Numbered from the stretch's first letter, positions 7,105 to 55,698 are shown. The stretch: DNA of 64,000 nucleotides from Dimorphilus gyrociliatus (GCA_904063045.1 CAJFCJ010000001.1:558001-622000), one strand, 5' to 3'. Made by a program: numbers and translations. Notes: generated from the letters alone by a model not told the origin.

Positions 7105-9250
7105 TTAGGAATAGTAAAGAGGAGAATGAATAAAGTTCAACTTATGTAATATTTAACTTGAACTTTTATCTTAAAACTTCTATATTTTGATATTTCATAC
7201 AAAGCCAACAATGAAACTTGAATACTCTTTAAATACGATTGAAAAATATTAACCTCCCCCCACCTCCGGCCTACAAAACGGCTCTAACACTCATTTCTCC
7301 CACTCCACCCCCCACCCTTTTTCAAGTAAATATCTAACTAATTATGAAAATATCGATATCTAAGTACTTTTTATTATTATGAAAATTTAGAAAGGCTATA
7401 TCCCTAAAACTAGTTCATTTATTTGTCTATTTTAAGACTTTTAGAAATTTCTCATAAGAACTGTCGACAAGTTTTATACTAAAAATCTAATTACTTTGAT
7501 ATAAAGGGCGCATGTTTTAACCAAAAGAAAAAGTATCTTTTATAGAATTATATTTCATTTTATTTTGAATCAAAACTTTTCTTTTTCTTGTTCTTTCTTT
7601 TAGATTCCTCCTGCACCTCCTCCCCTCCCCCTCCCTATCTCTCTCTCTCTCTCTTTCATGCGCCTCTTTTATATGCCACATTTTAACCATTTTCAAAGGA
7701 TTTTATCTGTCGTTGTTATTTTACGACTTCTTTTAATAAATAAAAGTGACGAGGAGGAAAAAAAAGGTAATAAATAATAGTCTTTGTTTACTAGTAAACT
7801 TTTGATAATAGTTGTACAGGTAAATGTAGAAGTGAGAAGAGACAGAGTGAGAGAGAGAAAGAGAGAGAGAGAAGTTAATGGAAAGTCATAAAATACTAAT
7901 ATTAGTATGGGTTTTAACATTTTTTATCATTCCACCAACTTGAATAAAACGAATTACTTATACACGAAATACCACTTTTTTTATTGTCAACTAATCCGGA
8001 CACGAACTTCGTGGTTTTTTTCGTGAATAGATTGACCTTACTAGTACATTTAGTATTAATAATAAGTGGAGAGATCAAGTCTCAAAAGACGCTCTCAACC
8101 CTTTTAATACCTATTTGAGTATACATAAATTTACAAATATTAAAATAGATTCTTTGATGAAATATACAGCTTTCATCTTCCGAGTTCAAAAGATAATTTT
8201 CTTTGAAATACACACCTAGATATTTTTCTAAGCTCTAGCTCTTCTTCCTTTCAATTATAATTACTATCGAAAAGGCTATGTCCTAAGGTTATTTTCTACA
8301 ATTGAACATGCGTTATGCCATCTATAGGCTGTTTTCTTTTTTTAGTTTTTTTGAACCCTAATTCCCAAAATGAAACTACCTCACATAGAAACAAAACAAT
8401 AGAGAAAAATCATAAAATTATGAGTATTTCGAAAAATGAAAGCGATAGTCAACAACTTTGATGTTTTAAAAAATATGCCATTTCTTTTTTTATCAACAGT
8501 CAATACTCTAATAATTTAAAAATATCATTTCTTTTATGTTGAATGAAAGCAAAAAAAGAGACGAAAAAAACTATCTTTTATGTAAAAAAAATAATAAGAA
8601 GAATGTTGTGGGAGTAAAATGATACTAAAAATAGACAACTATTAGAATATTTACTGTATACAGGATTTATGTATAATATATCTGTTTAATGGATTTAATG
8701 ATTAATATCAAAATAATAAAAATAACAACAAAAACAGCAAAGTATTAACATTAAAAAACAAACAATTTAAAATTTTTCAATTCATTTTATTAATTTGTCA
8801 ATTTCTTTTTTATTCCCTTTTTTCATTCAAACAAAATGTTCAAATTACCTAAATAAAATGTTAAGTGAAGAAAAGGGAACGCTCAAACAATAAACAAGAA
8901 GAAAATGTACAAAAGGATGAATAACAATATTAATAGTAGAGAGAGGTAATAGAAGAAGAAGAAGAAGAAGAGAAAGAAAATTGTAGATGCGAAATTTTTC
9001 CTCATTTTAGAGAGAAATTAATCTGTTGTTTTTTTTTGGTGAATTTAATTTTTATTGAGTACAAAAGTTAAAGAAGAAATAAAAAAAAACATTAGAAATT
9101 TGCCTTCTAAGTTGTTGAAATTGTAAATAGTTTGAAAAGATAATATAGGCCAAAATAAAATCTGTCATAAACAAAATAATAAGTGGAAAACTTTAAAAAG
9201 TTTTCAATTTTCCGATAAAATATTTAATTTCCTTTTCTTGTCTGAAAACA

Positions 9251-40700: not shown

Positions 40701-41252
40701 ATAAAATTCTTTAACTTTTTATATCTTTCCCTTATCATATAATAATTAAAAAAAAACTTTAACGCTATTTCTCTTATCATTCAAGTTTTCAATTTCATCT
40801 TTTTGTAACTTTTTTTTCTTTTTCTCTCGCTTAACCTTTCCTTTTTTTTCCTTTCTTTCTATAAACAACTTACAATCTTAAATTACATGTTTGTCATTCA
40901 TTCCTTCCAAAGGCTTTCTTTGAAATTCAACTTATTTTCCTTATATCTACTTCTTTTGATACTGAGATGAAAGGAAACTATTTCGAAATACTTAAATATT
41001 TTCTCTGTTTACAACGAACAGTGTTTTGTTTGTCATTTTAAGCTTAGAATAGAAGGAAAGAAACTGATTTATATTATTCCATTAAATTGTTGTTTTTGAA
41101 ACAAACAAACAAAAAGAAAGAAAAATATCAATAAAAAAATGCAGTGTCTTATAAAGTAAAGAAAAAAAGCCTAAAACAAAAATGAAGTGCCAACAAACAA
41201 GATGGAAAAAGTAAAATAATAAATTAATAAGTCAATAGTATAATTTAACATT

Positions 41253-44200
41253 TCAATCGGAAGAAGCTTGTTTGTCTTGTTTGTGTCTATGTTGTTTTTC
41301 CCATTCTAATTGCTTCTTCTTTTCGATTTGTTTCTCTTTTTCAGCTTCTTCTTCTCTCATTTTATTAACCAAATAAGTCACCTGTTCAGCTAGACTTTCC
41401 AGACGCATTTCGTTCGAATCTTCCTCATGTCTGAGCGATAGCGATCGATTTAGAGGAAAGAAATTATACTTCTCCTTTTCCAGCTAAGGCAAAGTTTAAA
41501 AATCCGTTTAAAAAAATCTATACAAGTCGTATAAATTACAAATAAAACTTACACATCTAAATACGTGGAGCTCCAAAGCCGTATAGTCATTTGACCTAGT
41601 TTCGTCGAGATGTATAAAGAAAAACAGATAGGCCCATTGATTGTGTTCCTTTTTTATATGTTCTTCGAAGCCCTAAGAATATTTGAGGAAGAAATTTAGA
41701 TAGGATAAAACAGAGATAATAGATAAGAAAAAAAACAAACTAACCCCTCCGTGATGTTCAAAATCATAGCTAGCCTTAGAACAAATAAAGCATGCAGATC
41801 TCATATCGTTATCAACTTGCCATTTGTTATCTCGCAATTCTGAGAATGTGTCGACGATGATACCAAAGATAATGTTCAAGCCGATTGTAGTGATAATCAT
41901 CCAAAATGTCAGATCTAGTATGACTTTATATAAATAATACGTAAATGTCTTCTCCTCGGGAATTGATAAAAAGTCATATATCCCAGTGATAAAACCATGA
42001 TGAAGAACAGTAACCGCACACTCATATAGAGTTCGACAGAATAATCCATTCTTTCCCGGATATAAATCTCTAAACGCAGCGAATGATATCAGAGCGTATA
42101 TATAAATGAAGACAAGACCAAACAAGAAGACCCATAATAAAGAATAACCGTTCTGAGTTACAGCCTGAATAGCTCTCCTCAACAATTGATTAAACTGGGC
42201 AATATGGAGTAGATGGAATGCAAAGAAATAACCCCAAAACACTGTGCCAAGTATGGAAAACGTAAACAATAAAAGATACCAAACTGTAGCGAAAGAGACA
42301 AGGTTCACTTGTAGATTACTTTCGTCTTTATCTTCATCGTCTTCCTCTTTCTCCGTCTCGTCTGATTTCTTAAAAAAATTGACTACGCTGTCAAATTTTG
42401 GTAAAGCCGGAGCATTCGTTATAAAAAATGATAATATCACACAAAGAGCAACAAGATTATGCAATCCTCCGAGTACATACGTAACAATAGGTGTTGAACT
42501 ATATCGATAATCTGGCTTTATAACTGAAGTCTTTTCATTCGCCTCCCAAGTTATCATAGTTAATAAAAATAATACAAAAGACAAGAAAATCATTATCATA
42601 TTGAATTGATACCAAAATTTTACAAAGAAACGTGAAAAGGGATTGCCGAGAACTTTTCTTGTATATTTAATATCTTTTATAATATCTTTACTCCAATCCA
42701 TAAAATCTCTCAGTTTATTACTCGGTGATGAACGATCAACTTCGTATTTAAATTTTTCTTTAACATCTTCCCTAAGAACGCTTTTATCCTTAACGCGGAA
42801 GTAGACTTTTTGAAGTTCGTCACCTTAAGATAGACATTAAACATCAATAGATTAGTTTTTATATTAATTCATTGATCTAAAGTAAAAAGAGAATTCTATT
42901 TTCTTTTACATACCTTTTACTATCTCAATACTTAGAGTTGACCTATCGTAAAATTTCCAGATTAAGCTTTTCTCTCCCTTTAAAGGATAGGTGGCACCAC
43001 TTAAGTCCAATACTTTCCTTAGGAAATGAAAATATTTGAAACCTAAGGCAATCAGATCATCTTTTGGGATAACTTCCTCGATTCTTAGGACAGTCATTGA
43101 TCGATTAAAACAGTCAACACAGACTGTAAATATACTTTCATTGTCTATTGCTTCAGCAACATCGTCAGCAATTCCTTGTCCATCAGGTAAACTCTCTTCC
43201 ACTAAAGCCGTTAGTAGATTAACAATAGCCTTCTTTAATTCCATAACGATCTCTGGATCGCAAGCTTGAAATTGGGCTCCTCTTAGCATAAAATTAATAT
43301 AATCAATTATTTTATTGTCATAAACAACCAGCTGATTAGATGTATTTCCGGATGTGAATTCTACCAAAGTGTTTAATAATTCGGTTACTAGTCCTATTGT
43401 ATTTTCATCAATTGATGAATAGAGTAAACTAAGGAATCCAGCAGTTTCCGATATTAAATTCACTGATTTGATATTATCAGGTTGTTCTCTGAGATAATCT
43501 TGTAGCGTTTTATTCTGACCGTCACACATTAGACCTAACAACTTGAGAACTAGTTCGATGTAGCCGTCATCTTCGCAATCGAACTCGTCAAGATTTCCCA
43601 TTGTCTCTCGAATCATTTGTTCAATCGCTTCATCTGTTAACTCCTCTCCATTGTTCGTCGGGGCTATTTGATTTCTTTTACTAGCTATCGAGGACACTCT
43701 ACGCTTAGATTTACCAAATGTTCTGCTGCCCATCGTTCTACTACCCATCGTTCTACTACCCATCATTCTGCTACCCAACATTCTACTTCCCATCGCTCTA
43801 CTTCCCATTATCCTACTACCCAACATCATTCTGCTTCCCATTCGATTGCCGGGTAGTTTATGGGAATTAAGATTCATGGATGACACACCCATATTTAATC
43901 TCGAACCAACAGCCAATGATCCGAAATTATTTGCCGCCATAACCTCCATTTCAGCCATTTTACCATCTTTCATTGCTTTTCTTAAGGCTTTCGCCTGATC
44001 GATTTCGAGTTTAATCTTTTCCTGATGTTGTGCAACTAAAGATCGTCTTTCTTTAATTGATAGGCTAGACAACTGCATACGGGTCTTAACAGCCAAGAAG
44101 AATTTCTCCTCTCTAGTCCCTAAGAAATATAATATAAGACTATCCTGAACCTTTTCATTACCACCAAACAGCATAACCGCCTGAAAAGCTAAAACTTCTC

Positions 44201-47200
44201 GTACTATATCAGAATTATTCTTAGCCAAATGAGATAGAACTTGTAATACTGCATCATAAGAATTTAAAGCATTTTGAACTCCTTCAATCTTCTTTAATAT
44301 TTTTGAAAAAGATTTTGGATCAGTTAACCAATCACCCGGTAATTTTACAATTTCATTATGAATTAAAGCTCTCAATAATTGAAGACATTTGATATCCAAA
44401 CTCTCTTGTTCGATTCTTTCTAATTCCGATGTTGGAAGACTCGACGCGGAAATTCTATATAAAATAAAGGTACTAATATCTACTGTACATACACGCATAT
44501 TGTAATATATCGTTCATTCAAAAGTGATAAATTTGTTAATGTGAATGTGATACATTGTTTGCTAAAGCTTTAACTATTCGTACCTTGGAGATAAATCCGA
44601 TAATCTATATATATTTATATACTGTATAAGATATACCATATAAATATTTGATATGTTATAATATATAAATCTTCTAATGGACAAAGGCCATAAAATTTTG
44701 AAAGAAATACATTTTAGAGAGAATTTTTTGCTATTAGGGATAAATAGCCTCTAATATTGTTTCTCTCTGATCTATCATATATGTCAACCCTTTTCCTAAT
44801 ACTAATAAAGAAAAAGAGTGCTAAATTTTCCTTTATAGTTCACTTTCTAATTAAAAAGAGCATAGTAGTCTTTTCTGGTTTATAAATAAATAATTAATTA
44901 TTTAACTCACTCTAGCTGCTGAACGAGCTTTTTGGCTAAATCATAGCGCTTTACAGCATCCTTCTCTCTTTCGTCAATAAATATTCGCAAATGATCTTGA
45001 AATTCTTGACCGAGTGGTAATTTTTCATCACCCATTGGATCGAAGTATTCTTCGTCGATGGCATAGCCAGTTTGAGCCCTTACCGAGTTTTCTCCTCCGT
45101 ATATTACAGCAAAATTATTAGCAAATATGTTTAACAGGACGTTTATTTCCTCTTCCTTCTCGTAATCTTCGTCGTACTTCTTCCTACTATCCGATTTAAG
45201 ATCTTGAACGAGTCCTGCTCGATTGAATTTCTCTTGAAATTCTTCCATCACCTTTACTGGTAAAGTTGATTGACTAAGAACAGATGTCATACAAGAGGTG
45301 AGATTGTTCATATGCGTAGCATTTGATATCGACTCTCCAACAGCATTCGTAAATTTTGTCAATGAATTCGCCAATTCGTCCAACATATCTGCTTCGCTAG
45401 CGTAGTTTTCAGCATCAGGTTGATAATGTGTTCGAAAGAACACCTGTAAAAATGGTAGGACGGCATCAAAAGCAAAATGTAAATTTCCATGAAACGATGT
45501 CATCTTTTTTGAGTCCATACCACTACTCATAGCATCGTTTAATTCTTCGGCGTTGCCCAATGATATAATATTCGATTTTTGGGTACTAATAAGAAAATCA
45601 AATGTGATTTCAATGTATAATAAATAGATAGAGACTATATAAAAAAAAAAACTAACGTTTTACTGGGTGCTTTCTTTAACAACGATTTAGTAAGATCAGG
45701 ATTACTCTCTGCTATCTCAGCTAGAGATATAAAATTCAGGGTTAGAGTTTTAATGAATTTCCACATTGATCTAAAATGTTAATAAGATTATTAATATTAT
45801 TTAATAATAGATATTTGACCAATCATTCTTACTCGAGGTGACCAACTTCTCCAGATTGACCGTCAACCACAACTCCTCCTGCTGTATTCAAATAAACCCA
45901 TAAGAAAAATCTTAAATATGGTCTTTTCTTTATATTATCTATATCCGAACTATTCAAAATATCCATTAATTCTGAAATAGTAAAAATCGTCTGGCATTGC
46001 GATTCAATTGACTGATTTTCGCCTTCGGCACATGTAGCTAAAAGATCGACCATGGATGCAAGATATTCAACCTCCTTCCCTGAACTGGTGAGTAACTTTT
46101 TTCTATTCTCGGCTGGTTGATCAACAATATAGGCAACCTCGGATCGATATTGCATGAAATATTTCATTACATAAGATTGATTACGTTTCAAAGGCAAATT
46201 CAATTCTTCTACTTTTACAACAGCGTTTAATAGATCCAAAAATTGAGGAGAGTTCGCCTTATGTTTAGCGACAATAGACATGATCTTTTGAATTTGATAA
46301 GATAAGATTTTCATACAATTAGTCTTGTTTCCTGTAAAAACTTCAACTAATGCGTCGGCCAATTGCGGTTCTGCACCTTCAATTTCCAAGAGTTTGTCAA
46401 GACGATCGAATAGTCTTTGTTGTACTGTTGCATTTCCCCTAGCTAAGGATTTTAGGAGAACAAAACTATTCTCAAAAATCTGCTTAATTCCAGAATATTG
46501 CTCCATTAATTTTGCATCAATTTGCTGTGCAAAAATTGAAAATACGTCCGATAGAATTCCATGATTATATAATATTGTTTGATTCATCGGATGAGGTTCT
46601 TCCGGTTCGTTATCTAAAGAGCAAAATTCTATCAGCTTATTTAGAATAATATTCATTTCTGTAGTCTGTTCAACTGTCATTTTAGAAGCTGTAAGTCTTC
46701 TCATTACTGGCAATAACTGGTTGACATTTTTTAAAATTTGGCAAGAATGTTCATTGATGAGAATTTGAGCTTGAACTGCTCTTTTGAATAAATTATCATG
46801 GCCTGAGAAATATCGATTAATTAAAGACATGGAACCAACAACCATAGGGTCGTAATTGTATAAGGATAAATCTTTAAACAGTTCAATTACATCAATCCCG
46901 AGTCCTTTAAAAAAGGAAGATTCGTTGAAAAGATCTTTAAGTCGTCTCAGTGCCGAATGATTCGTTCTACAAAAAGAGAGGAAATGTTATTAATTGAAAA
47001 TTAATTACTGCTGTACTAAATCAATTAACGTACCCTGAATTCTCTAAAAAGTCATAATTTTCGTACAAAAGTTGTCCAAGTTCTGGATTAGAATCAGGCT
47101 TATTCGCTTCAGTATAAACTATTTTGAATTCTCTAACAAATCTCTGTGAAACAGTTTATAACAATTAGTTAAATATTATTGATTCAAGTACATGATTAAC

Positions 47201-50200
47201 TAACTTTAAGTCTCAAATTGAATTGATAATTAAAGAAGAGATCGAGTACTTTTATTGCTTGTACTTTAGCATCGGCAATTGCTTTAGATTCAGGACTCTG
47301 CTTATATCTTAAATCATTACGGTAACGTTTCATCACTTCATTTGGAATACTTCCTCCGGCGGGAATTTCATATGGTTTATCATTTCGTCCATCCAATAGG
47401 TTTAGGAAGGGAGTCAATAGAGCTTTGACGTCCTCTCTTTTCTTATAATATCCAAATCTAACGAGATAGTGTACCAATCTCATAACTTGTTCAATTAAGA
47501 TATTATGTCCTATCAAGGAAGCGGTCATATCTTGGTTCCTATCAAAAAACTTTGACAACCAATTGTGTAGCTGTTCAAAATGTTCAGTTCCACTTGTAGG
47601 CAGGTCTTCTTCACTCAATACGTCATCATCATCCAAATCGTCATAAACGTACGTTAAATTAATTCTATCTAGTAGAGAAACATTTTTACCAACATCGATA
47701 AATAAGGCTATAATTAAATGGCAATATTTGGCTCTTAATTGATCAGGTAATTCTTCGTTACTAAGGCAAAGATAGGCTTCTTCCCACGTTAAATAGTTTA
47801 ACTCTTCAGTAATAATTTTCATCGGAAATTCATTCCTACCGTAACATAATTTTCCGAAAAGATCTAACTGATGTTCGAGGAATAGTATATCTTCATCGTT
47901 TTTATGAATTTCAACAAATTCTACCAAAGGAGTCCAAGTTCTCTGTTTATTTGCCGATACGTAAACAACATTCGAATCCTTTCCAATCTTTTGTCCTAAA
48001 TCTGTGTAAAATACACAATTTTTATCGCCTTCCATCAACCATCTTTTAGTTATATGATTTTGATTGTCGGGAATAGAAACGCCGTCACATACGCATAAGA
48101 CACTTAGCAAATCCAAATAACGATAATTCTTATTCTTCTTTAATAAGGAAACAAATTGATCAATATGAGTAATAGTAATACGATCAACAATCTTTCTGTT
48201 ATCCTTAATCAATTCCATAACCATGTGAGCGGCATTTAATCCTAATGAAAATGATAAAGAAATAATCAATGAGAGAAGTAATTATAAAGAAATCAATTGA
48301 CTTACCAACAGGTCCTTCAAACGAAATTTGACTTTCGAAGAAAGATATATGTTTAGCTATATATAGCTCATTTTTTCTACTATTTCCCATTAAATAGGTA
48401 TACAAAAGATCGTAACATTCAACAAACACCTTAATCAAAAATCTCTGATCGCTTGATCCTCTACATGGAAGTTGTAACAAGTTGACGAGTAGTTCAACAA
48501 TTCTTAAATTTCGCATTAGCTTTTGCCTATTCTTATCAGGTTCGGAATTAACAATCATAAACTTTTTAAGCTCATCCAAAGTTGCAACCATTTCTTGACT
48601 ATCTTTCAAAGTTATATTCACTCCCGCCTTTTTCTATATTTAAATATATATATATATATATGTCTATATGCTAATAAAACCGAACATAGAAATCTTTACA
48701 TTCAATTTATTACAATAAGACCGATATATTATTACTATTTCATTATTTGTTTAATCTCATTGCCTAGAGAATTATAGTCATGAATAGCGGGTGAACTAAA
48801 AACGTGTCGTTTTAGGGATTACCCTTGTTTTGGTATGATATTTTATATTATGCGTTTGAATTTTGTTAACTAGTTAAAAAATTAAACTTTTCAATTGGTT
48901 ACTAATAAAAGATGCTTACATTTTCAATCAATTTCTGTATACAAGGCACCATTCCAGCCACAAAGTAAAAGTTATGACAGTGCTCATCTTCAACCTTTTG
49001 TAGTGTAAATGCATCATCGTACTGCATTTCGTTAATCGCTTCAATATGATTTAATTTTGCAGTTGTCCATTTTAAGCTAGCCATTGACGTTCCATCAGCA
49101 TCGCTACCAACATTCTTTTTTCTCTTATATTCATCTAAAGCAAAAAAAAATTCTTTTACTTTCTTTTTAAGTATTTTAGACAAACTTGTTAACTTTACCT
49201 TGGCCTGCGTGTAGCCAATGACCGCTTACTACGTGTTCTATTCTGCAATAAGTTTCGTATTGAATATTGTCTTGTTCCTGTTTTGAAAATATAAAATACT
49301 TGTGAAAAGTTTGTATATAAAATTAAATATTTAGTAATAAAGCTTAAGCTGAAACATAACAATGAAACAAATAGTATAGATACAACTATCATTTTTAGTT
49401 AACGTTTTGAATAATATATCTTTTAATTAATTAATATTTAGTAATAACTGAACAATAAGGGAAGAAATTAAAATATAAGCTATTATTAGTTAAGATAAAA
49501 TTAAACTTATATCTTTAACATGCAGTTTAACTACACAAAGATTTGTATAAAAGGGAGGATAGGAAACGTATAATGCTTAAATTAAATTAAGTCAGTTTTT
49601 TTTTAACCAACAAAACAAACTAAATGATACAATTTCTATTTTGCTATAAAACCTTTCAATTAACACGAATAATTACAGAAAAAAAAAGCATCAAGGATTA
49701 GAAGATCACATCAATTACCAGAACTCCGTCATCAGTTTTCTCCTGTTGGTGTAAAAGTCGTCCAATAAAAGAAAAAAAAAAAAAAAAAGAATAATATTTA
49801 AGAGAAATATTAAGAAATTATTAATGTGAATATTTAAAAAAAAAATCTATAATAGCTATATATGAATAATGAAAATGTAGATATTCTATAGCTATTATCC
49901 GTGCATAAAAAATAGTCTATTGGTAAGATTATATAGAGATATCTCTTAATTTCAGTTTGTTATAGTCACAATACATATATGTATATATATATATATATGT
50001 ATATACTGTATATATTTACATATTTTTATCAGAATGATATCTTTGAATAATTTAAAATTAATGACATTTTTAAAAAAACTAACCAACATAACTGCGTGTA
50101 GTCTAAATACTGTTTTTGGATCTTCGGAATTATTTGTTAGAGATACTTTCTTTTGATCGACTTTTAAATAAGATCTTGTACACATATGCTTTATTCGACA

Positions 50201-51201
50201 TTGTTGCTCCCATTTAATTATTGAACCATCAATACAACCGGATATCAATTCTATTTGCCAATAGTTTATTGCCGATGATGAAGGAAATAGGGTTTTTGGA
50301 TTATTCTGATCAACCGGTCTTATTCGAAGATGAACTGAAAAATAGGCCAGACAATTGCTAAGTTATATACTTAAGAATAATTCAATATTTTACCATCTTC
50401 GCTTATTTCATCATTGAAAAGTCCTTCAGCACACAGGTAAGCCTCTATTTCCTTGTGAAATAATCTAACTGGTTCTCCAGCTTTTAGATACGCTAAATCC
50501 GTATCTTTCTTACCAGGCTTATACCTTCTCAATATCCTAAATCCTGATTGTCGAACTGATAGATTTAATTCCAAACATTCCTTGTAAACCGATTTCGATG
50601 GTAATTTAGATTTGCTAACGTGAAGGAATTGACCAGGTGACTTGATTGATTCAAGGACTATTTGATCTTCAACTTGAACTATATCGCCTTCAGCTTTCAC
50701 CTTATATCTGGGCATTATTCTGAAGTGAGCATTCTTTGCATTAAATGGTGAGAGGAAAACTTGCATGCTCCCTGATTCCGTTGTTGACGTTGTCTTTGTG
50801 CTCACATGAAGATATTTTTGAGTGAACACGTGCTTCAATTGAATCATTTGACCATACAGAACTTTTCTACCAAACTGCCTTTTTTCTTCATTTGTGTTGT
50901 CCTCATTTTCAGCCTCGGCTGCCAATTGAAGTTGAGCCAATTTTGCTTTGGAATCGACATCAGAGAGACGATCATTCGCTTGCGCCGTTCTATACTTTTT
51001 GTTGAACTTATAACGATTAACTATACATAACTCGAAAGCGATGCTATTAGGGTCGGCGACCTTGGGTTTCTGCCTCGAGTCGTGGGATCTTACGCCAACA
51101 TCGGTGTGGATCGAACTCGATAAATAAGAAAAGACGTAACCAGAAGACTCTTCAGAGAAAAGGCAAACATGGTCTCCAATACAAAGAGTTTCTTGCGCCA
51201 T
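41253..51201 (-). CDS. Divergent IP3-receptor-superfamily Ca2+-release channel (roughly 2500 aa)
   Basis: About 15 exons with consistent phases. Suppressor/beta-trefoil start (LCIGDHVCLF..), MIR (KHMCTRSYL), RQKLMR, RIH and RIH-associated regions, LNTLVEF (Ca-sensor Glu), six-TM region, gate helix LNIIFGIIVDTFSELRD, Zn finger CFICS..H..KEHN. Stop TGA at 41253-41255. It is too divergent for me to call it the ITPR1 ortholog. Confidence 0.92.
43719..43845 (-). repeat. Coding 15-bp tandem repeat encoding x-M-G-S-R pentapeptides inside the IP3R-like gene
   Basis: ...RMGSRMMLGSRIMGSRAMGSRMLGSRMMGSRTMGSRTMGSRTF...; plus-strand unit approximately CTACCCATCGTTCTA. Confidence 0.95.
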
Positions 51202-53277: not shown

Positions 53278-55698
53278 ATGGTTTCAATTAAATATCTACT
53301 ATTCTCTCTACTTTTTTTTCAAACATATCCGGAAGTTAGAACTACTTGTACAGCCGATATTGGTTTAATAATTGATAGTTCAGGTTCAATTAAACTACCT
53401 AATTGGATAATAATTAAGAATTTTGCTAAGAATCTAATTAGGAGATTTCACGTTGAAGGAAAAGACGGAACCAAATTTGCTGCTGCTACTTTTGCTACCA
53501 AGGCACATCAAATTTTTAATTTGAATTCTTTTCAACACGAATCTGAATATATAAAGAGTATAGATGGAATGAAATATCATAAAACAAGGACAAATACTAC
53601 AGGAGGTCTGAAGTTAATGTTAAATGAACAATTTACAATTAAAAACGGAAATAGGCCGCATGTTGATGATGTATTCATTCTGATTACGGATGGTAAGCCA
53701 ACAGAAAATGAAACTCTTTTACAAGATGTAGTTGAAAAAATTCATAAAGCCGGTATACACTTCGTAGCAGTTGGCGTCACTGAAGAAATAGATGAAGAAT
53801 TATTAAGGAGAATAGTTAGGGATCCCGACTGCAAATTACATCCGAAAAACGAATATTGTTTATTACCTGAAAATCCATATAAAAATTTCTTTATTTATGT
53901 TAAAGAATTTAATCAATTAACAGGTGTTATTGATAGAATACTTAACTCTTCTTGTAAAAACGTTGAAAAAACTACTATAAGTCCTTTCATTGAGACGACA
54001 GAAACAATACTTGAAACTTTATCTACAGAACCTCAAATAACTACAATTCCATCAGGCGAGACAACAGCAGCAATGCTTGACAAACAATCAACCTTATCAA
54101 CAGAACCCCAAATAGCTACAACTCCATTAATTGAGACAACAGAAACAATGCTTGATAAACGATCAACCTTATTAACAGAACCTCAAATGACTACAGAAAG
54201 AATTAATGGTTTCGTGTGCCCTATGGATATTGGACTAATAATTGATAATTCAAATTCTATTAAACATGCCAATACATTATTAATAGACAATTGGAAGATA
54301 ATTAAGAGCTTTTTAAAGGATTTAATATATAAATTTCATGTATCTAACAAAGACAAAGACAGTGTACGCTTTGCGGCCAACAAATTTGGAAATAGCAGTC
54401 AGACCATCTTTCAGTTAAATTCCTATCAAACAAAACAGGACTATGCAAATGCAATTGATAATATAGAATTTATTGGAGGTTTTACTAATATTGCGGGAGG
54501 TCTGTCAAAAATGTTAACAGAGCAGTTTAAAGAAGATCTAGGAAATAGACGAAACGCTGATGATGTATTCATTCTTATAACTGATGGAAAACCTAATATA
54601 GATGTTAGAAAAATACCTCACGTAGTGGAAATGATACACAAAGCTAACATACGATTAATTGCTATTGGTATTTCAAAGAATGTTAATGAAACTCAACTTA
54701 GAGAATACGTTAAAGATCCTGATTGTAGCATTACAAAACATAGTAAATATTGTCCTTCTTGGAAAAATCCTTATAGGAATTCTTATTTCAAAGTAAACGA
54801 ATTTAATAAATTGTCAACAATTATTAATGAATTAATAGCTAGTGCTTGCTTTCCAAGAGCCACTTTTACACCTTCGATATTTTTTGAACTATCCTCCACC
54901 AATCTTGACACTATGACTACTGCAACGAGAGAGCCCCACCATTGGCCTTTTAAAAGTGAGTTATGCCTAGCAGATATAGGCCTTATTATAGATAATTTTC
55001 CATCTATTAATGAAGTGGAGGAACAAAAAATGAAAGAATTCTTGATCGAGTTAATAAGCAATTTCTACGTAACAGGAGATAGAGGAACTCGCTTTGCAGC
55101 CAATGGAATAGCAACTACAAATAATCAGGCGACCTTTCAGTTGAATTCTTATAAAACAATAAACGAATATAATCTAGCAATTAATCATTTAAATTTTACG
55201 AATAGTAATGAAAATTTAACAGTATTTGATAGTTTAAACATTATGTTTAATCAACAATTTACCGCAAAAAACGGCAATAGAGAGCAAGTTAAAGATGTTT
55301 ACATGATAATAACTAATGGAAATTTTATTCCTAACACTCAGATGATTCCTAACATTCTGAAAAAGATATATAACACAACTGTTCAACTAATAGGAATTGG
55401 AATTAAAGACTCTATCAAAGGTAACCTACTCAGAGAATACGTTAGGGATCCGGATTGTAATCTCTATCCAAAACACTTCTATTGTCAATCATCCAAAAAT
55501 ATTTATGAATATTCATATTTCTATGTAAATGATTTTAATCAACTCAATGGTATTATAAGGACTTTAGTAAAACGAATTTGTAAGGATATTAAAAGGGAAT
55601 CGGACATTCTAAATAGTTTGGCAATACGAAATGGAATTCATATATTAACCATCATTTGCTTAATCATACTCCAAACGACTTCATATATATTTATTTGA
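53278..55698 (+). CDS. Triple-VWA cell-surface protein, probably GPI-anchored; same family as the first VWA domain of paralogs A/B
   Basis: Intronless 806-aa ORF: signal peptide, three C.ADIGLIID-type VWA domains each with the DPDC-x7-YC insert, a Thr-rich repeat linker and a hydrophobic C-terminus (NSLAIRNGIHILTIICLIILQTTSYIFI). Confidence 0.9.
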   Translation: MVSIKYLLFSLLFFQTYPEVRTTCTADIGLIIDSSGSIKLPNWIIIKNFAKNLIRRFHVEGKDGTKFAAATFATKAHQIFNLNSFQHESEYIKSIDGMKYHKTRTNTTGGLKLMLNEQFTIKNGNRPHVDDVFILITDGKPTENETLLQDVVEKIHKAGIHFVAVGVTEEIDEELLRRIVRDPDCKLHPKNEYCLLPENPYKNFFIYVKEFNQLTGVIDRILNSSCKNVEKTTISPFIETTETILETLSTEPQITTIPSGETTAAMLDKQSTLSTEPQIATTPLIETTETMLDKRSTLLTEPQMTTERINGFVCPMDIGLIIDNSNSIKHANTLLIDNWKIIKSFLKDLIYKFHVSNKDKDSVRFAANKFGNSSQTIFQLNSYQTKQDYANAIDNIEFIGGFTNIAGGLSKMLTEQFKEDLGNRRNADDVFILITDGKPNIDVRKIPHVVEMIHKANIRLIAIGISKNVNETQLREYVKDPDCSITKHSKYCPSWKNPYRNSYFKVNEFNKLSTIINELIASACFPRATFTPSIFFELSSTNLDTMTTATREPHHWPFKSELCLADIGLIIDNFPSINEVEEQKMKEFLIELISNFYVTGDRGTRFAANGIATTNNQATFQLNSYKTINEYNLAINHLNFTNSNENLTVFDSLNIMFNQQFTAKNGNREQVKDVYMIITNGNFIPNTQMIPNILKKIYNTTVQLIGIGIKDSIKGNLLREYVRDPDCNLYPKHFYCQSSKNIYEYSYFYVNDFNQLNGIIRTLVKRICKDIKRESDILNSLAIRNGIHILTIICLIILQTTSYIFI
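53992..54198 (+). repeat. Coding tandem repeat, about 3 units of 66-75 bp (ETT..ML..STLSTEPQ.TT), mucin-like
   Basis: Units start at 53992, 54058 and 54133. Confidence 0.9.

What the first reader, a model, noticed from the sequence alone, without database searches (positions are those of the whole stretch)
41960..42045. IP3R-family channel with a rewritten, two-residue-shorter selectivity filter
IP3Rs and ryanodine receptors share the filter GGG(V/I)GD (ITPR1: C..[23 protein letters not shown]). Here the pore helix aligns well (CRTLYECAVTVLHHG) but continues FITGIYDFL: two residues shorter, without the Gly triplet and with a bulky Tyr before the conserved Asp. The gate helix (LNIIFGIIVDTF), Ca-sensor Glu, C2H2 Zn site and an intact ~2500-codon frame are all preserved, so this is not decay. 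It predicts an intracellular release channel with different conductance or selectivity. A two-residue filter deletion also separates CNG from K+ channels (established precedent). It probably represents a second, non-canonical IP3R lineage.
Basis: partly seen in the sequence, partly recalled or inferred. Interest (0 to 1): 0.75.

Follow-up and report, generated by a model that had tools for sequence, protein, structure and literature searches.

The report
IP3R-B channel gene, non-canonical pore filter
This is an intact, expressed gene of the marine worm Dimorphilus gyrociliatus for a calcium-release-channel relative of the already described but barely studied IP3R-B family. Its odd pore filter is real, but every animal member of that family has it, so it is not special to this gene.

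Summary
On the minus strand, 41973-42002 encodes HHGFITGIYD where canonical IP3R and RyR channels have GGG(V/I)GD. A spliced transcript contig carries identical sequence. An environmental variant differs at 16 sites in the channel exon, all synonymous.

The "two residues shorter" claim depends on the alignment. HMMER and MAFFT open a 2-residue gap in the filter, but the loop after it is longer. The net distance from pore helix to S6 is 38 residues against the canonical 39.

The "second IP3R lineage" reading is right but not new. A tree puts the gene inside a strongly supported animal clade (placozoan, acoel, hemichordates, spiralians). That clade is separate from canonical IP3R-A and sister to choanoflagellate and Capsaspora homologues. 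This matches the IP3R-B family of Alzayady 2015 and Heath-Heckman 2021.

All 37 animal members in the tree, and 108 of 110 relatives surveyed, lack GGGxG[DE]. They share the pattern G-Φ-x-x-x-Φ-[F/Y]-[D/E] (Φ = hydrophobic residue), and S6 is almost invariant.

The genome holds at least two more such genes, DgyrCDS2578 and DgyrCDS5116. This scan already flagged IP3R-like channels without GGGVGD on other pieces of this genome (s1-081247, s1-082519, s1-083352).

Changed conductance, selectivity or ligand remains an untested inference.

The parts
41253..51201 (-). Whole IP3R-B family gene, from the start ATG at 51201 to the stop at 41253-41255
   Evidence: Pfam hits on the exons in IP3R order: Ins145_P3_rec, MIR, RIH x2, RIH_assoc, Ion_trans. 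Collinear with paralogue P0200 residues 1-2535. The public assembly annotates a 2573-aa product here.
50395..51201 (-). First coding exon: N-terminal suppressor/beta-trefoil domain
   Evidence: phmmer E = 1e-24 to ITPR1-3 N-termini against 1e-6 to RyR. Residue 7 aligns with ITPR2 residue 9.
50087..50335 (-). Exon with the remodelled IP3-site beta loop (VHLRIRPVDQNNPKTLFP)
   Evidence: It aligns to FLRTTGRQ of IP3R-A with a 5-residue insertion. The R265 equivalent is kept; T266, T267, G268 and R269 are not.
48298..48633 (-). Exon with the alpha-domain side of the ligand pocket (DKNRQKLMRN; NSRKN)
   Evidence: The R504 equivalent is Lys. K508, R511, R568 and K569 equivalents are kept. The Y567 equivalent is Ser.
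42914..44454 (-). Exon with the RIH_assoc domain, the Ca-site residues and an MGSR-type repeat linker
   Evidence: Pfam RIH_assoc, 6.7e-22. The human IP3R3 E1882 position is Asp and the E1946 position is Glu. Exon ends come from the X3 contig joints.
41745..42823 (-). Channel exon: S1-S6, pore helix, filter and first half of the Zn site
   Evidence: Exon ends come from the X3 spliced contig. AF2 mean pLDDT is 85.6. Foldseek top matches are RyR1-3 and IP3R3 transmembrane domains, TM about 0.7.
41988..42029 (-). Pore helix (exon residues 265-278)
   Evidence: DSSP helix 265-278 in the AF2 model. It aligns with the pore helix of RyR2.
41973..42002 (-). Non-canonical selectivity-filter stretch HHGFITGIYD
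   Evidence: Coordinates. Alignments. The one environmental difference inside it (41982) is synonymous.
41844..41882 (-). S6 gate motif GLNIIFGIIVDTF
   Evidence: Identical or nearly so in 110 relatives; 72 have exactly GLNIIFGIIVDTFSEL. G320 and F326 are invariant in alignment A1.
41781..41792 (-). CFIC, the first half of the C2H2 Zn site
   Evidence: C347 is invariant and C344 is at least 90% conserved in A1.
41553..41672 (-). Penultimate exon (GFEEHIKKEHNQW...) carrying the two His of the Zn site
   Evidence: Translation. Joints 41672/41745 and 41483/41553 are in the transcript contigs.
41253..41483 (-). Last exon: FFPLNRSLSL motif, charged helical tail and stop
   Evidence: Translation. 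Splice joint seen in X1 and X3 contigs.

Best explanation
The gene encodes a subunit of an IP3R-B family intracellular channel of Dimorphilus gyrociliatus. It is one of at least three such genes in that genome.

Shown:
- It has the IP3R domain order and an RyR/IP3R-type six-helix channel fold.
- It is spliced and transcribed.
- Its channel exon is under purifying selection.
- It sits in the animal IP3R-B clade, apart from canonical IP3R-A.
- Every animal member of that clade sampled lacks GGGxG[DE] and instead has G-Φ-x-x-x-Φ-[F/Y]-[D/E] (Φ = hydrophobic residue).

The filter therefore most likely changed on the stem of the animal clade, before placozoans and bilaterians split. It has been kept since, next to a nearly invariant S6 gate.

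Inferred:
- The protein forms tetrameric channels in endomembranes.
- The pore mouth is lined by bulky hydrophobic or aromatic side chains plus one acidic ring (Asp here), in place of a glycine backbone-carbonyl funnel. Conductance and Ca2+ versus monovalent selectivity should then differ from IP3R-A and RyR.
- Gating may not be by IP3 in the canonical way. The basic residues of the alpha side of the pocket are kept, but the beta-side loop is remodelled and lacks the R269 equivalent.
For: Domains: (N-terminus matches IP3R far better than RyR).

Fold.

Transcription and splicing.

Selection: 16 of 16 differences in the channel exon are synonymous, against 14 synonymous and 5 non-synonymous in the linker exon.

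Phylogeny: the IP3R-A clade has support 100/96. The 37-row animal clade containing the window has 100/98. The 42-row clade that adds choanoflagellates and Capsaspora has 96/90.

Filter state: (108 of 110 relatives lack GGGxG[DE]). The tree needs three losses, one of them on the animal stem.

S6 invariance.

Ligand pocket. Ca site.

[quoted passage not shown] Single Gly substitutions in GGGXG abolish IP3R function, and R269 is needed for IP3 binding (PMC7939385).
Against: No permeation or ligand-binding data exist for any animal IP3R-B that I could find.

From my memory of the abstract of Alzayady et al. 2015 (paper not held), the Capsaspora IP3R-B neither bound IP3 nor released Ca2+ when expressed. 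A conducting pore is therefore not guaranteed.

Equating my clade with the published 'IP3R-B' rests on shared species (Saccoglossus, Lottia, Capitella, Capsaspora), not on matched accession numbers.

The tree uses only the channel region (442 columns), and several outgroup branches are long.

The monomer AF2 model says nothing about pore radius.
Confidence: 0.85

Rival explanations
1. The protein no longer conducts ions. It would act as a regulatory, scaffolding or heteromeric partner of canonical release channels, having lost the glycine filter.
For: The GGGxG[DE] motif is absent. In canonical IP3Rs, single substitutions in that motif abolish Ca2+ release (PMC7939385). From memory of the Alzayady 2015 abstract, the Capsaspora IP3R-B gave no Ca2+ release.
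Against: The pore helix and S6 gate are the most conserved parts of the family. The channel exon shows 16 synonymous and 0 non-synonymous differences. An acidic residue is kept after the aromatic position in most members. That pattern fits a working pore. A replacement motif conserved from placozoan to annelid is not what a dead filter looks like.
Confidence: 0.12
2. The filter is not shortened. The segment keeps the canonical register with every residue substituted, so the Asp of IYD does not sit at the position of the GD Asp.
For: The span from the pore-helix Gly to S6 is 38 residues here and 39 in many relatives, against 39 in canonical channels. The 2-residue gap is always paired with a 1-2 residue insertion a few residues later.
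Against: Two independent aligners place the gap so that the acidic residue matches the canonical Asp/Glu. The Φ-[F/Y]-[D/E] triplet is the conserved core of the motif. AF2 puts I-Y-D in a short turn right after the pore helix.
Confidence: 0.3
3. The feature is a novelty of this genome: a newly arisen divergent paralogue or a previously unseen lineage.
For: The nearest database protein listed by the searches is only 76% identical in the channel exon.
Against: The same filter type occurs in molluscs, nemerteans, brachiopods, flatworms, hemichordates, an acoel and Trichoplax. Macrostomum has HRGLIAGIYD, almost the same motif. The family is published.
Confidence: 0.02
4. It is an assembly or sequencing error, a pseudogene, or there is an alternative exon that restores GGGVGD.
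For: None found.
Against: The X3 spliced transcript contig is identical over 41200-44454, and the filter and S6 lie in one uninterrupted exon. An independent environmental contig keeps the same protein sequence. No GGGxG[DE]-coding frame exists in the gene region; the only match in the window is at 7312, in a stop-filled frame. The frame is open throughout.
Confidence: 0.01

Closest known systems
IP3R-B (IP3RB) family of IP3R/RyR-superfamily channels (Alzayady et al. 2015, Mol Biol Evol 32:2236; Heath-Heckman et al. 2021, BMC Genomics 22:215)
   Same: Phylogenetic position: apart from IP3R-A, nearer to RyR, with choanoflagellate and Capsaspora homologues as sister. Taxon range: spiralians, hemichordates, amphioxus, acoel and placozoan, with no vertebrate, fly or nematode member among the hits, as the papers state. 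It has the IP3R-type domain order and is about 2500 aa long.
   Different: Nothing that sets this gene apart from the family. The held papers do not mention the pore or filter of this family: 'pore' and 'selectivity' have 0 occurrences in the leech paper. Whether Alzayady 2015 describes it I could not check.
Canonical IP3 receptors (IP3R-A: ITPR1-3, Drosophila Itp-r83A, starfish ITPR)
   Same: Domain architecture, the N-terminal domain (1e-24), the C2H2 Zn site, the FEEHIKKEHN and FFP motifs of the tail, the Phe of the S6 gate, and the K508, R511, R568 and K569 equivalents.
   Different: There is no GGG(V/I)GD. The beta-side IP3 loop carries a 5-residue insertion and lacks the R269 equivalent. 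The Y567 equivalent is Ser. The E1882 equivalent is Asp. The luminal S5-pore loop is very short, so HMMER aligns IP3Rs only from the pore helix onward.
Ryanodine receptors
   Same: The channel domain scores slightly better and over a longer stretch against RyR (residues 181-359, 78 bits) than against IP3R. The S5-pore loop is short. RyR1-3 transmembrane domains top the fold search.
   Different: No SPRY or RyR-repeat domains, half the length, an N-terminus of IP3R type, and no GGGIGD.
CNG versus K+ channels (loss of two filter residues, the YG of GYG, goes with loss of K+ selectivity; established knowledge, Heginbotham et al. 1992)
   Same: An analogy only: within one pore-loop superfamily, a short change in filter length or composition separates classes with different selectivity.
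   Different: It is a different superfamily branch. Here the net length change is one residue and the functional consequence is unmeasured.

Membership tests
IP3R-B family | Groups in a tree with IP3R-B sequences, separate from IP3R-A and from RyR | tested here: met
   the window lies inside the 37-row animal clade (100/98). The IP3R-A clade (100/96) is elsewhere. A RyR-like 4930-aa protein lies outside the holozoan B clade (100/99). The link to the published name is by species overlap, not accession numbers.
IP3R-B family | IP3R-type domain architecture without SPRY or RyR repeats, about 2500 aa | tested here: met
   Pfam on the exons. The 2573-aa annotated product has the same five families.
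IP3R-B family | Holozoan and invertebrate distribution; absent from vertebrates, Drosophila and C. elegans | tested here: met
   The named close relatives are spiralians, hemichordates, amphioxus, an acoel, Trichoplax, choanoflagellates and Capsaspora. No vertebrate or ecdysozoan is among them. Absence was not searched for exhaustively.
IP3R-B family | No IP3 binding and no IP3-evoked Ca2+ release (reported for the Capsaspora member; recalled from the Alzayady 2015 abstract) | not testable with these tools
   Sequence only. The pocket is partly kept (R265, K508, R511, R568, K569 equivalents) and partly remodelled.
Canonical IP3R (IP3R-A) | GGG(V/I)GD selectivity filter | tested here: not met
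Canonical IP3R (IP3R-A) | Complete set of IP3-coordinating residues (R265, T266, T267, G268, R269, R504, K508, R511, Y567, R568, K569) | tested here: not met
   The T266, T267, G268, R269 and Y567 equivalents are replaced, and R504 is Lys.
Canonical IP3R (IP3R-A) | Placement in the IP3R-A clade | tested here: not met
Ryanodine receptor | SPRY and RyR-repeat domains, about 5000 aa, GGGIGD filter | tested here: not met
RyR/IP3R-superfamily tetrameric pore-loop channel (works like) | Six-helix transmembrane domain with pore helix, re-entrant loop, long S6 and C-terminal Zn site | tested here: met
   AF2 helices and pLDDT. Foldseek probability 1.00 to RyR and IP3R3 transmembrane domains. Zn-site spacing C-x2-C-x16-H-x4-H. 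Tetramer formation was not tested.

The most novel reading that the evidence does not exclude
Animal IP3R-B proteins are a functionally distinct class of intracellular channel. Their filter was rewritten once, before placozoans and bilaterians split, to G-Φ-x-x-x-Φ-[F/Y]-[D/E]. The first Ca-site Glu is Asp across the animal members sampled. The beta-side ligand loop is remodelled already in the unicellular relatives (Capsaspora, choanoflagellates), so that change is older. On this reading they would conduct with a different selectivity (for example far less Ca2+-selective, or monovalent) and respond to a ligand other than IP3. That would explain why spiralians keep two to several copies beside IP3R-A and RyR.
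Probability: 0.3. Interest if true: 0.7.

Novelty: new member of a known kind. Interest (0 to 1): 0.35.

Why it matters
As a single gene it is ordinary. It is an annotated member of a family named in 2015.

The family-level pattern is the useful part. An old, widespread branch of the IP3R/RyR superfamily replaced the glycine filter, where single substitutions are lethal to function in IP3R-A. It kept the rest of the pore almost invariant.

I found no functional study of any animal member. The one expression study places a leech copy in touch neurons.

The survey gives a concrete, testable contrast for permeation in giant release channels: swap the filters and measure PCa/PK. It also flags that automatic names such as "ITPR1-like" in invertebrate genomes hide proteins that probably are not IP3-gated Ca2+ channels of the textbook kind.

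Tried and rejected
- Alzayady et al. 2015 could not be read by DOI or PMC id. What it says about the IP3R-B pore is unknown to me, and I cite it from memory and through papers that quote it.
- Literature searches for IP3R-B with 'selectivity filter', and for GGGIGD/GGGVGD, found nothing on this family's filter.
- A PDB search with the open frame 49955-50362 gave no match because it included intron sequence. I used the paralogue P0200 and exon fragments instead.
- The first word search, with the Patella protein, returned only IP3R-B members and no IP3R-A. P0082 and P0072, tried as possible canonical references, turned out not to be animal IP3R-A. A region search with P0072 then supplied true IP3R-A sequences.
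- The exact look-up of the neighbouring ORF failed, but a homology search identified it.
- I first took the gene for an orthologue from another dinophilid, because DgyrCDS2578 is only 76% identical. Searches show the window is D. gyrociliatus itself (100% identity to GCA_904063045.1 contig CAJFCJ010000001.1), so the two genes are non-syntenic paralogues.
- Exons were searched by reference, and full-length comparisons used database proteins.
An unchecked note of this scan reports a RyR gene.

Full report
WHAT IS THERE

The finding lies in a multi-exon gene on the minus strand, from the start at 51201 to the stop at 41253-41255. The exons carry the Pfam families Ins145_P3_rec, MIR, RIH (twice), RIH_assoc and Ion_trans, in the order of an IP3 receptor.

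The open frame 41673-42701 reads CRTLYECAVTVLHHG FITGIYD FL. Further on it reads GLNIIFGIIVDTF and CFIC. HHGFITGIYD is at 41973-42002.

IS IT REAL?

I laid contigs of three public runs on 41200-47100.

- Run X3 has a 3086-letter contig with no difference from the window. It is spliced at 41483/41553, 41672/41745 and 42823/42914. These are the junctions I had predicted from GT-AG sites.
- The filter, S6 and the first half of the Zn site lie in one uninterrupted exon, 41745-42823.
- A marine metatranscriptome (X2) holds a 534-letter contig over 41770-42301 with 16 differences. All 16 are synonymous.
- In the low-complexity linker of the next exon the same sample shows 14 synonymous and 5 non-synonymous differences.
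- No frame in or near the gene encodes GGGxG[DE].

Error, decay and a hidden canonical exon are therefore excluded as far as contigs can show.

HOW DIFFERENT IS THE FILTER?

HMMER aligns the channel exon to RyR2 as gfitg..iyd over gvragggigd. MAFFT places the same 2-column gap in every animal relative. Both then insert 1-2 residues a little further on.

I counted from the conserved Gly at the end of the pore helix to the S6 motif. There are 39 residues in 136 of 170 canonical sequences, 39 or 38 in most non-canonical ones, and 38 in the window.

The loss of the Gly triplet and the aromatic residue before the acidic one do not depend on any alignment. "Two residues shorter" does. The net difference is one residue, and only a structure can fix the register.

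An AF2 model of the exon has mean pLDDT 85.6. It shows a pore helix at residues 265-278, a short turn at I-Y-D (281-283) and S6 from residue 293. Its best structural matches are the transmembrane domains of RyR1-3 and IP3R3, with TM about 0.7.

WHOSE GENE IS IT?

The neighbouring ORF, 53278-55695, is 98% identical to DgyrCDS121 of Dimorphilus gyrociliatus. The assembly stretch around that gene (GCA_904063045.1, contig CAJFCJ010000001.1) is 100% identical to window 43278-64000. There it carries an annotated 2573-aa product with the same five Pfam families.

The closest other protein is DgyrCDS2578 (P0200). It is 76% identical in the channel exon and 43-85% over the other aligned segments, mostly 60-70%. 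It is collinear over its full length, lies on another contig and has unrelated flanks. It is a paralogue. A third gene, DgyrCDS5116 (P0252), belongs to a second subfamily.

THE FAMILY

An exhaustive HMMER search with the channel exon found 3144 relatives. The closest come from limpets, bivalves, an octopus, a nemertean, a flatworm, an orthonectid and an acorn worm. None of these has GGGxG[DE].

A word search with the Patella protein returned about 120 more, from molluscs, annelids, nemerteans, brachiopods, flatworms, hemichordates, amphioxus, an acoel, a sponge and Trichoplax. Of the 110 with a recognisable S6, 108 lack the motif. The two exceptions are a choanoflagellate and an unnamed contig.

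The replacement follows the pattern G-[L/F]-[I/V]-x-[G/D/S]-[M/L/P/I]-[F/Y]-[E/D/T], where Φ elsewhere in this report stands for a hydrophobic residue. The flatworm Macrostomum has HRGLIAGIYD, almost the window's motif.

S6 is GLNIIFGIIVDTFSEL in 72 of the 110 and differs by one residue in most of the others.

THE TREE

I built an IQ-TREE tree of the channel region with the LG+C20 model, 59 rows and 442 columns.

- Canonical IP3R-A forms one clade with support 100/96. It includes vertebrate ITPR1, starfish, arthropods, a tardigrade and an acoel.
- The window lies in a 37-row animal clade with support 100/98.
- The sister of that clade is choanoflagellates plus Capsaspora CAOG_04510 (42-row clade, 96/90).
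- Further out are Corallochytrium and then a RyR-like protein.
- Spiralians have two subfamilies, each with high support. The window and DgyrCDS2578 are sisters (100/100) in the HHG/HRG subfamily.
- GGGxG[DE] is lost three times on this tree: on the animal stem, in Capsaspora and in one choanoflagellate.
- The acoel Convolutriloba has both an A and a B gene.

This topology and taxon range match what the literature calls IP3R-B. According to Heath-Heckman et al., citing Alzayady et al. 2015, the bilaterian ancestor had IP3RA, IP3RB and RyR. IP3RB was lost in vertebrates, Drosophila and C. elegans and is "understudied". A leech ip3rb2 is strongly enriched in touch (T) neurons. That paper never mentions the pore or selectivity. 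I could not read Alzayady 2015.

OTHER FUNCTIONAL SITES

I mapped sites through the paralogue and exon fragments onto mouse IP3R1 numbering.

- Kept: the R265, K508, R511, R568 and K569 equivalents.
- Changed: R504 is Lys and Y567 is Ser.
- The TTGR loop is replaced by a longer loop, R-[I/V]-R-x-x-D-Q-x-x-P-K-T-L, which lacks the R269 equivalent.

This signature runs from Capsaspora to annelids, so it too is a family trait. R269 is reported as required for IP3 binding (PMC7939385).

At the activating Ca2+ site, the human IP3R3 E1946 position is Glu. The E1882 position is Asp. That Asp is a family-wide C-D-[G/N]-Q signature in animals, whereas a choanoflagellate keeps C-E-G-H-N.

The Zn site has the spacing C-x2-C-x16-H-x4-H across the confirmed splice junction.

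INTERPRETATION

This is a working member of the IP3R-B family. Its filter is the family's normal state, fixed for at least the age of the placozoan-bilaterian split.

That it forms a cation channel with different conductance or selectivity is a reasonable inference, for three reasons:

- The pore helix and gate are the most constrained parts of the family.
- An acidic residue is usually kept after the aromatic position.
- In IP3R-A even single Gly changes in GGGXG abolish function.

It is still only an inference. The Capsaspora B protein reportedly gave no IP3 binding and no Ca2+ release (recalled from the abstract). Canonical IP3 gating is therefore doubtful, and a non-conducting role cannot be excluded.

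EARLIER NOTES OF THIS SCAN

One note named the organism (s1-080756); I confirmed that. Three first-reader notes on other pieces of this genome describe IP3R-like channels without GGGVGD (s1-081247, s1-082519, s1-083352). These are presumably the paralogues. One note predicts a microexon just after such a filter (s1-082118), and one mentions a RyR gene (s1-084584).

The scan has therefore seen this feature before on other DNA of the same genome.

LIMITS

- Only contigs, not raw reads, were available.
- The presence of a canonical IP3R-A in this genome was not tested.

Noticed in passing
window 43713-43844 (minus strand): There are about eight tandem copies of a five-residue unit (MGSR plus one variable residue, for example GSRMM, GSRIM, GSRTM) in the linker upstream of RIH_assoc. 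The environmental variant's non-synonymous differences cluster here or just N-terminal of it (5 of 19, against 0 of 16 in the channel exon).
   Followed up: partly
window 50087-50335 and 48298-48633; relatives P0014, P0016, P0017 and all B rows: The ligand pocket of the whole IP3R-B family has its own conserved signature: H-L-R-[I/V]-R-x-x-D-[Q/P]-x-x-P-K-T-L with a 5-residue insertion, K-x-R-Q-K-L-[M/L]-R-N, and S-R-K-N. It is conserved, with small variations, from Capsaspora and choanoflagellates to annelids. That suggests a conserved ligand that may not be IP3.
   Followed up: partly
relatives P0213, P0214, P0235, P0212, P0193 (alignment): Several nemertean and chiton IP3R-B isoforms carry insertions of 8-20 residues immediately after the filter's acidic residue, where other members have none. 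This looks like an alternative-splicing hot spot at the pore mouth. The window gene has no intron there.
   Followed up: no
relatives P0014 (Capsaspora CAOG_04510) and P0045 (Hartaetosiga balthica): Two unicellular relatives have also lost GGGxG[DE], apparently independently of animals. Three other choanoflagellates and Corallochytrium keep GGGLGE.
   Followed up: partly
window 41200-47100, runs X1 and X2: Spliced contigs of this worm gene occur in a coral metatranscriptome (99-100% identical pieces) and in a marine metatranscriptome (about 97% identical, probably another strain or sibling species). Dimorphilus-like worms therefore turn up in such samples.
   Followed up: no
window 53278-55698 (+): A divergently oriented neighbour encodes a multi-VWA-domain protein (DgyrCDS121, 1177 aa), with paralogues DgyrCDS110 and DgyrCDS10189. 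The intergenic space to the IP3R-B start codon is about 2 kb.
   Followed up: no
(database names): Automatic annotation names IP3R-B proteins "ITPR1-like", "ITPR2-like", "type 3" and so on in many invertebrate genomes. Molluscs carry three or more such genes. The names hide that none has the canonical filter.
   Followed up: no
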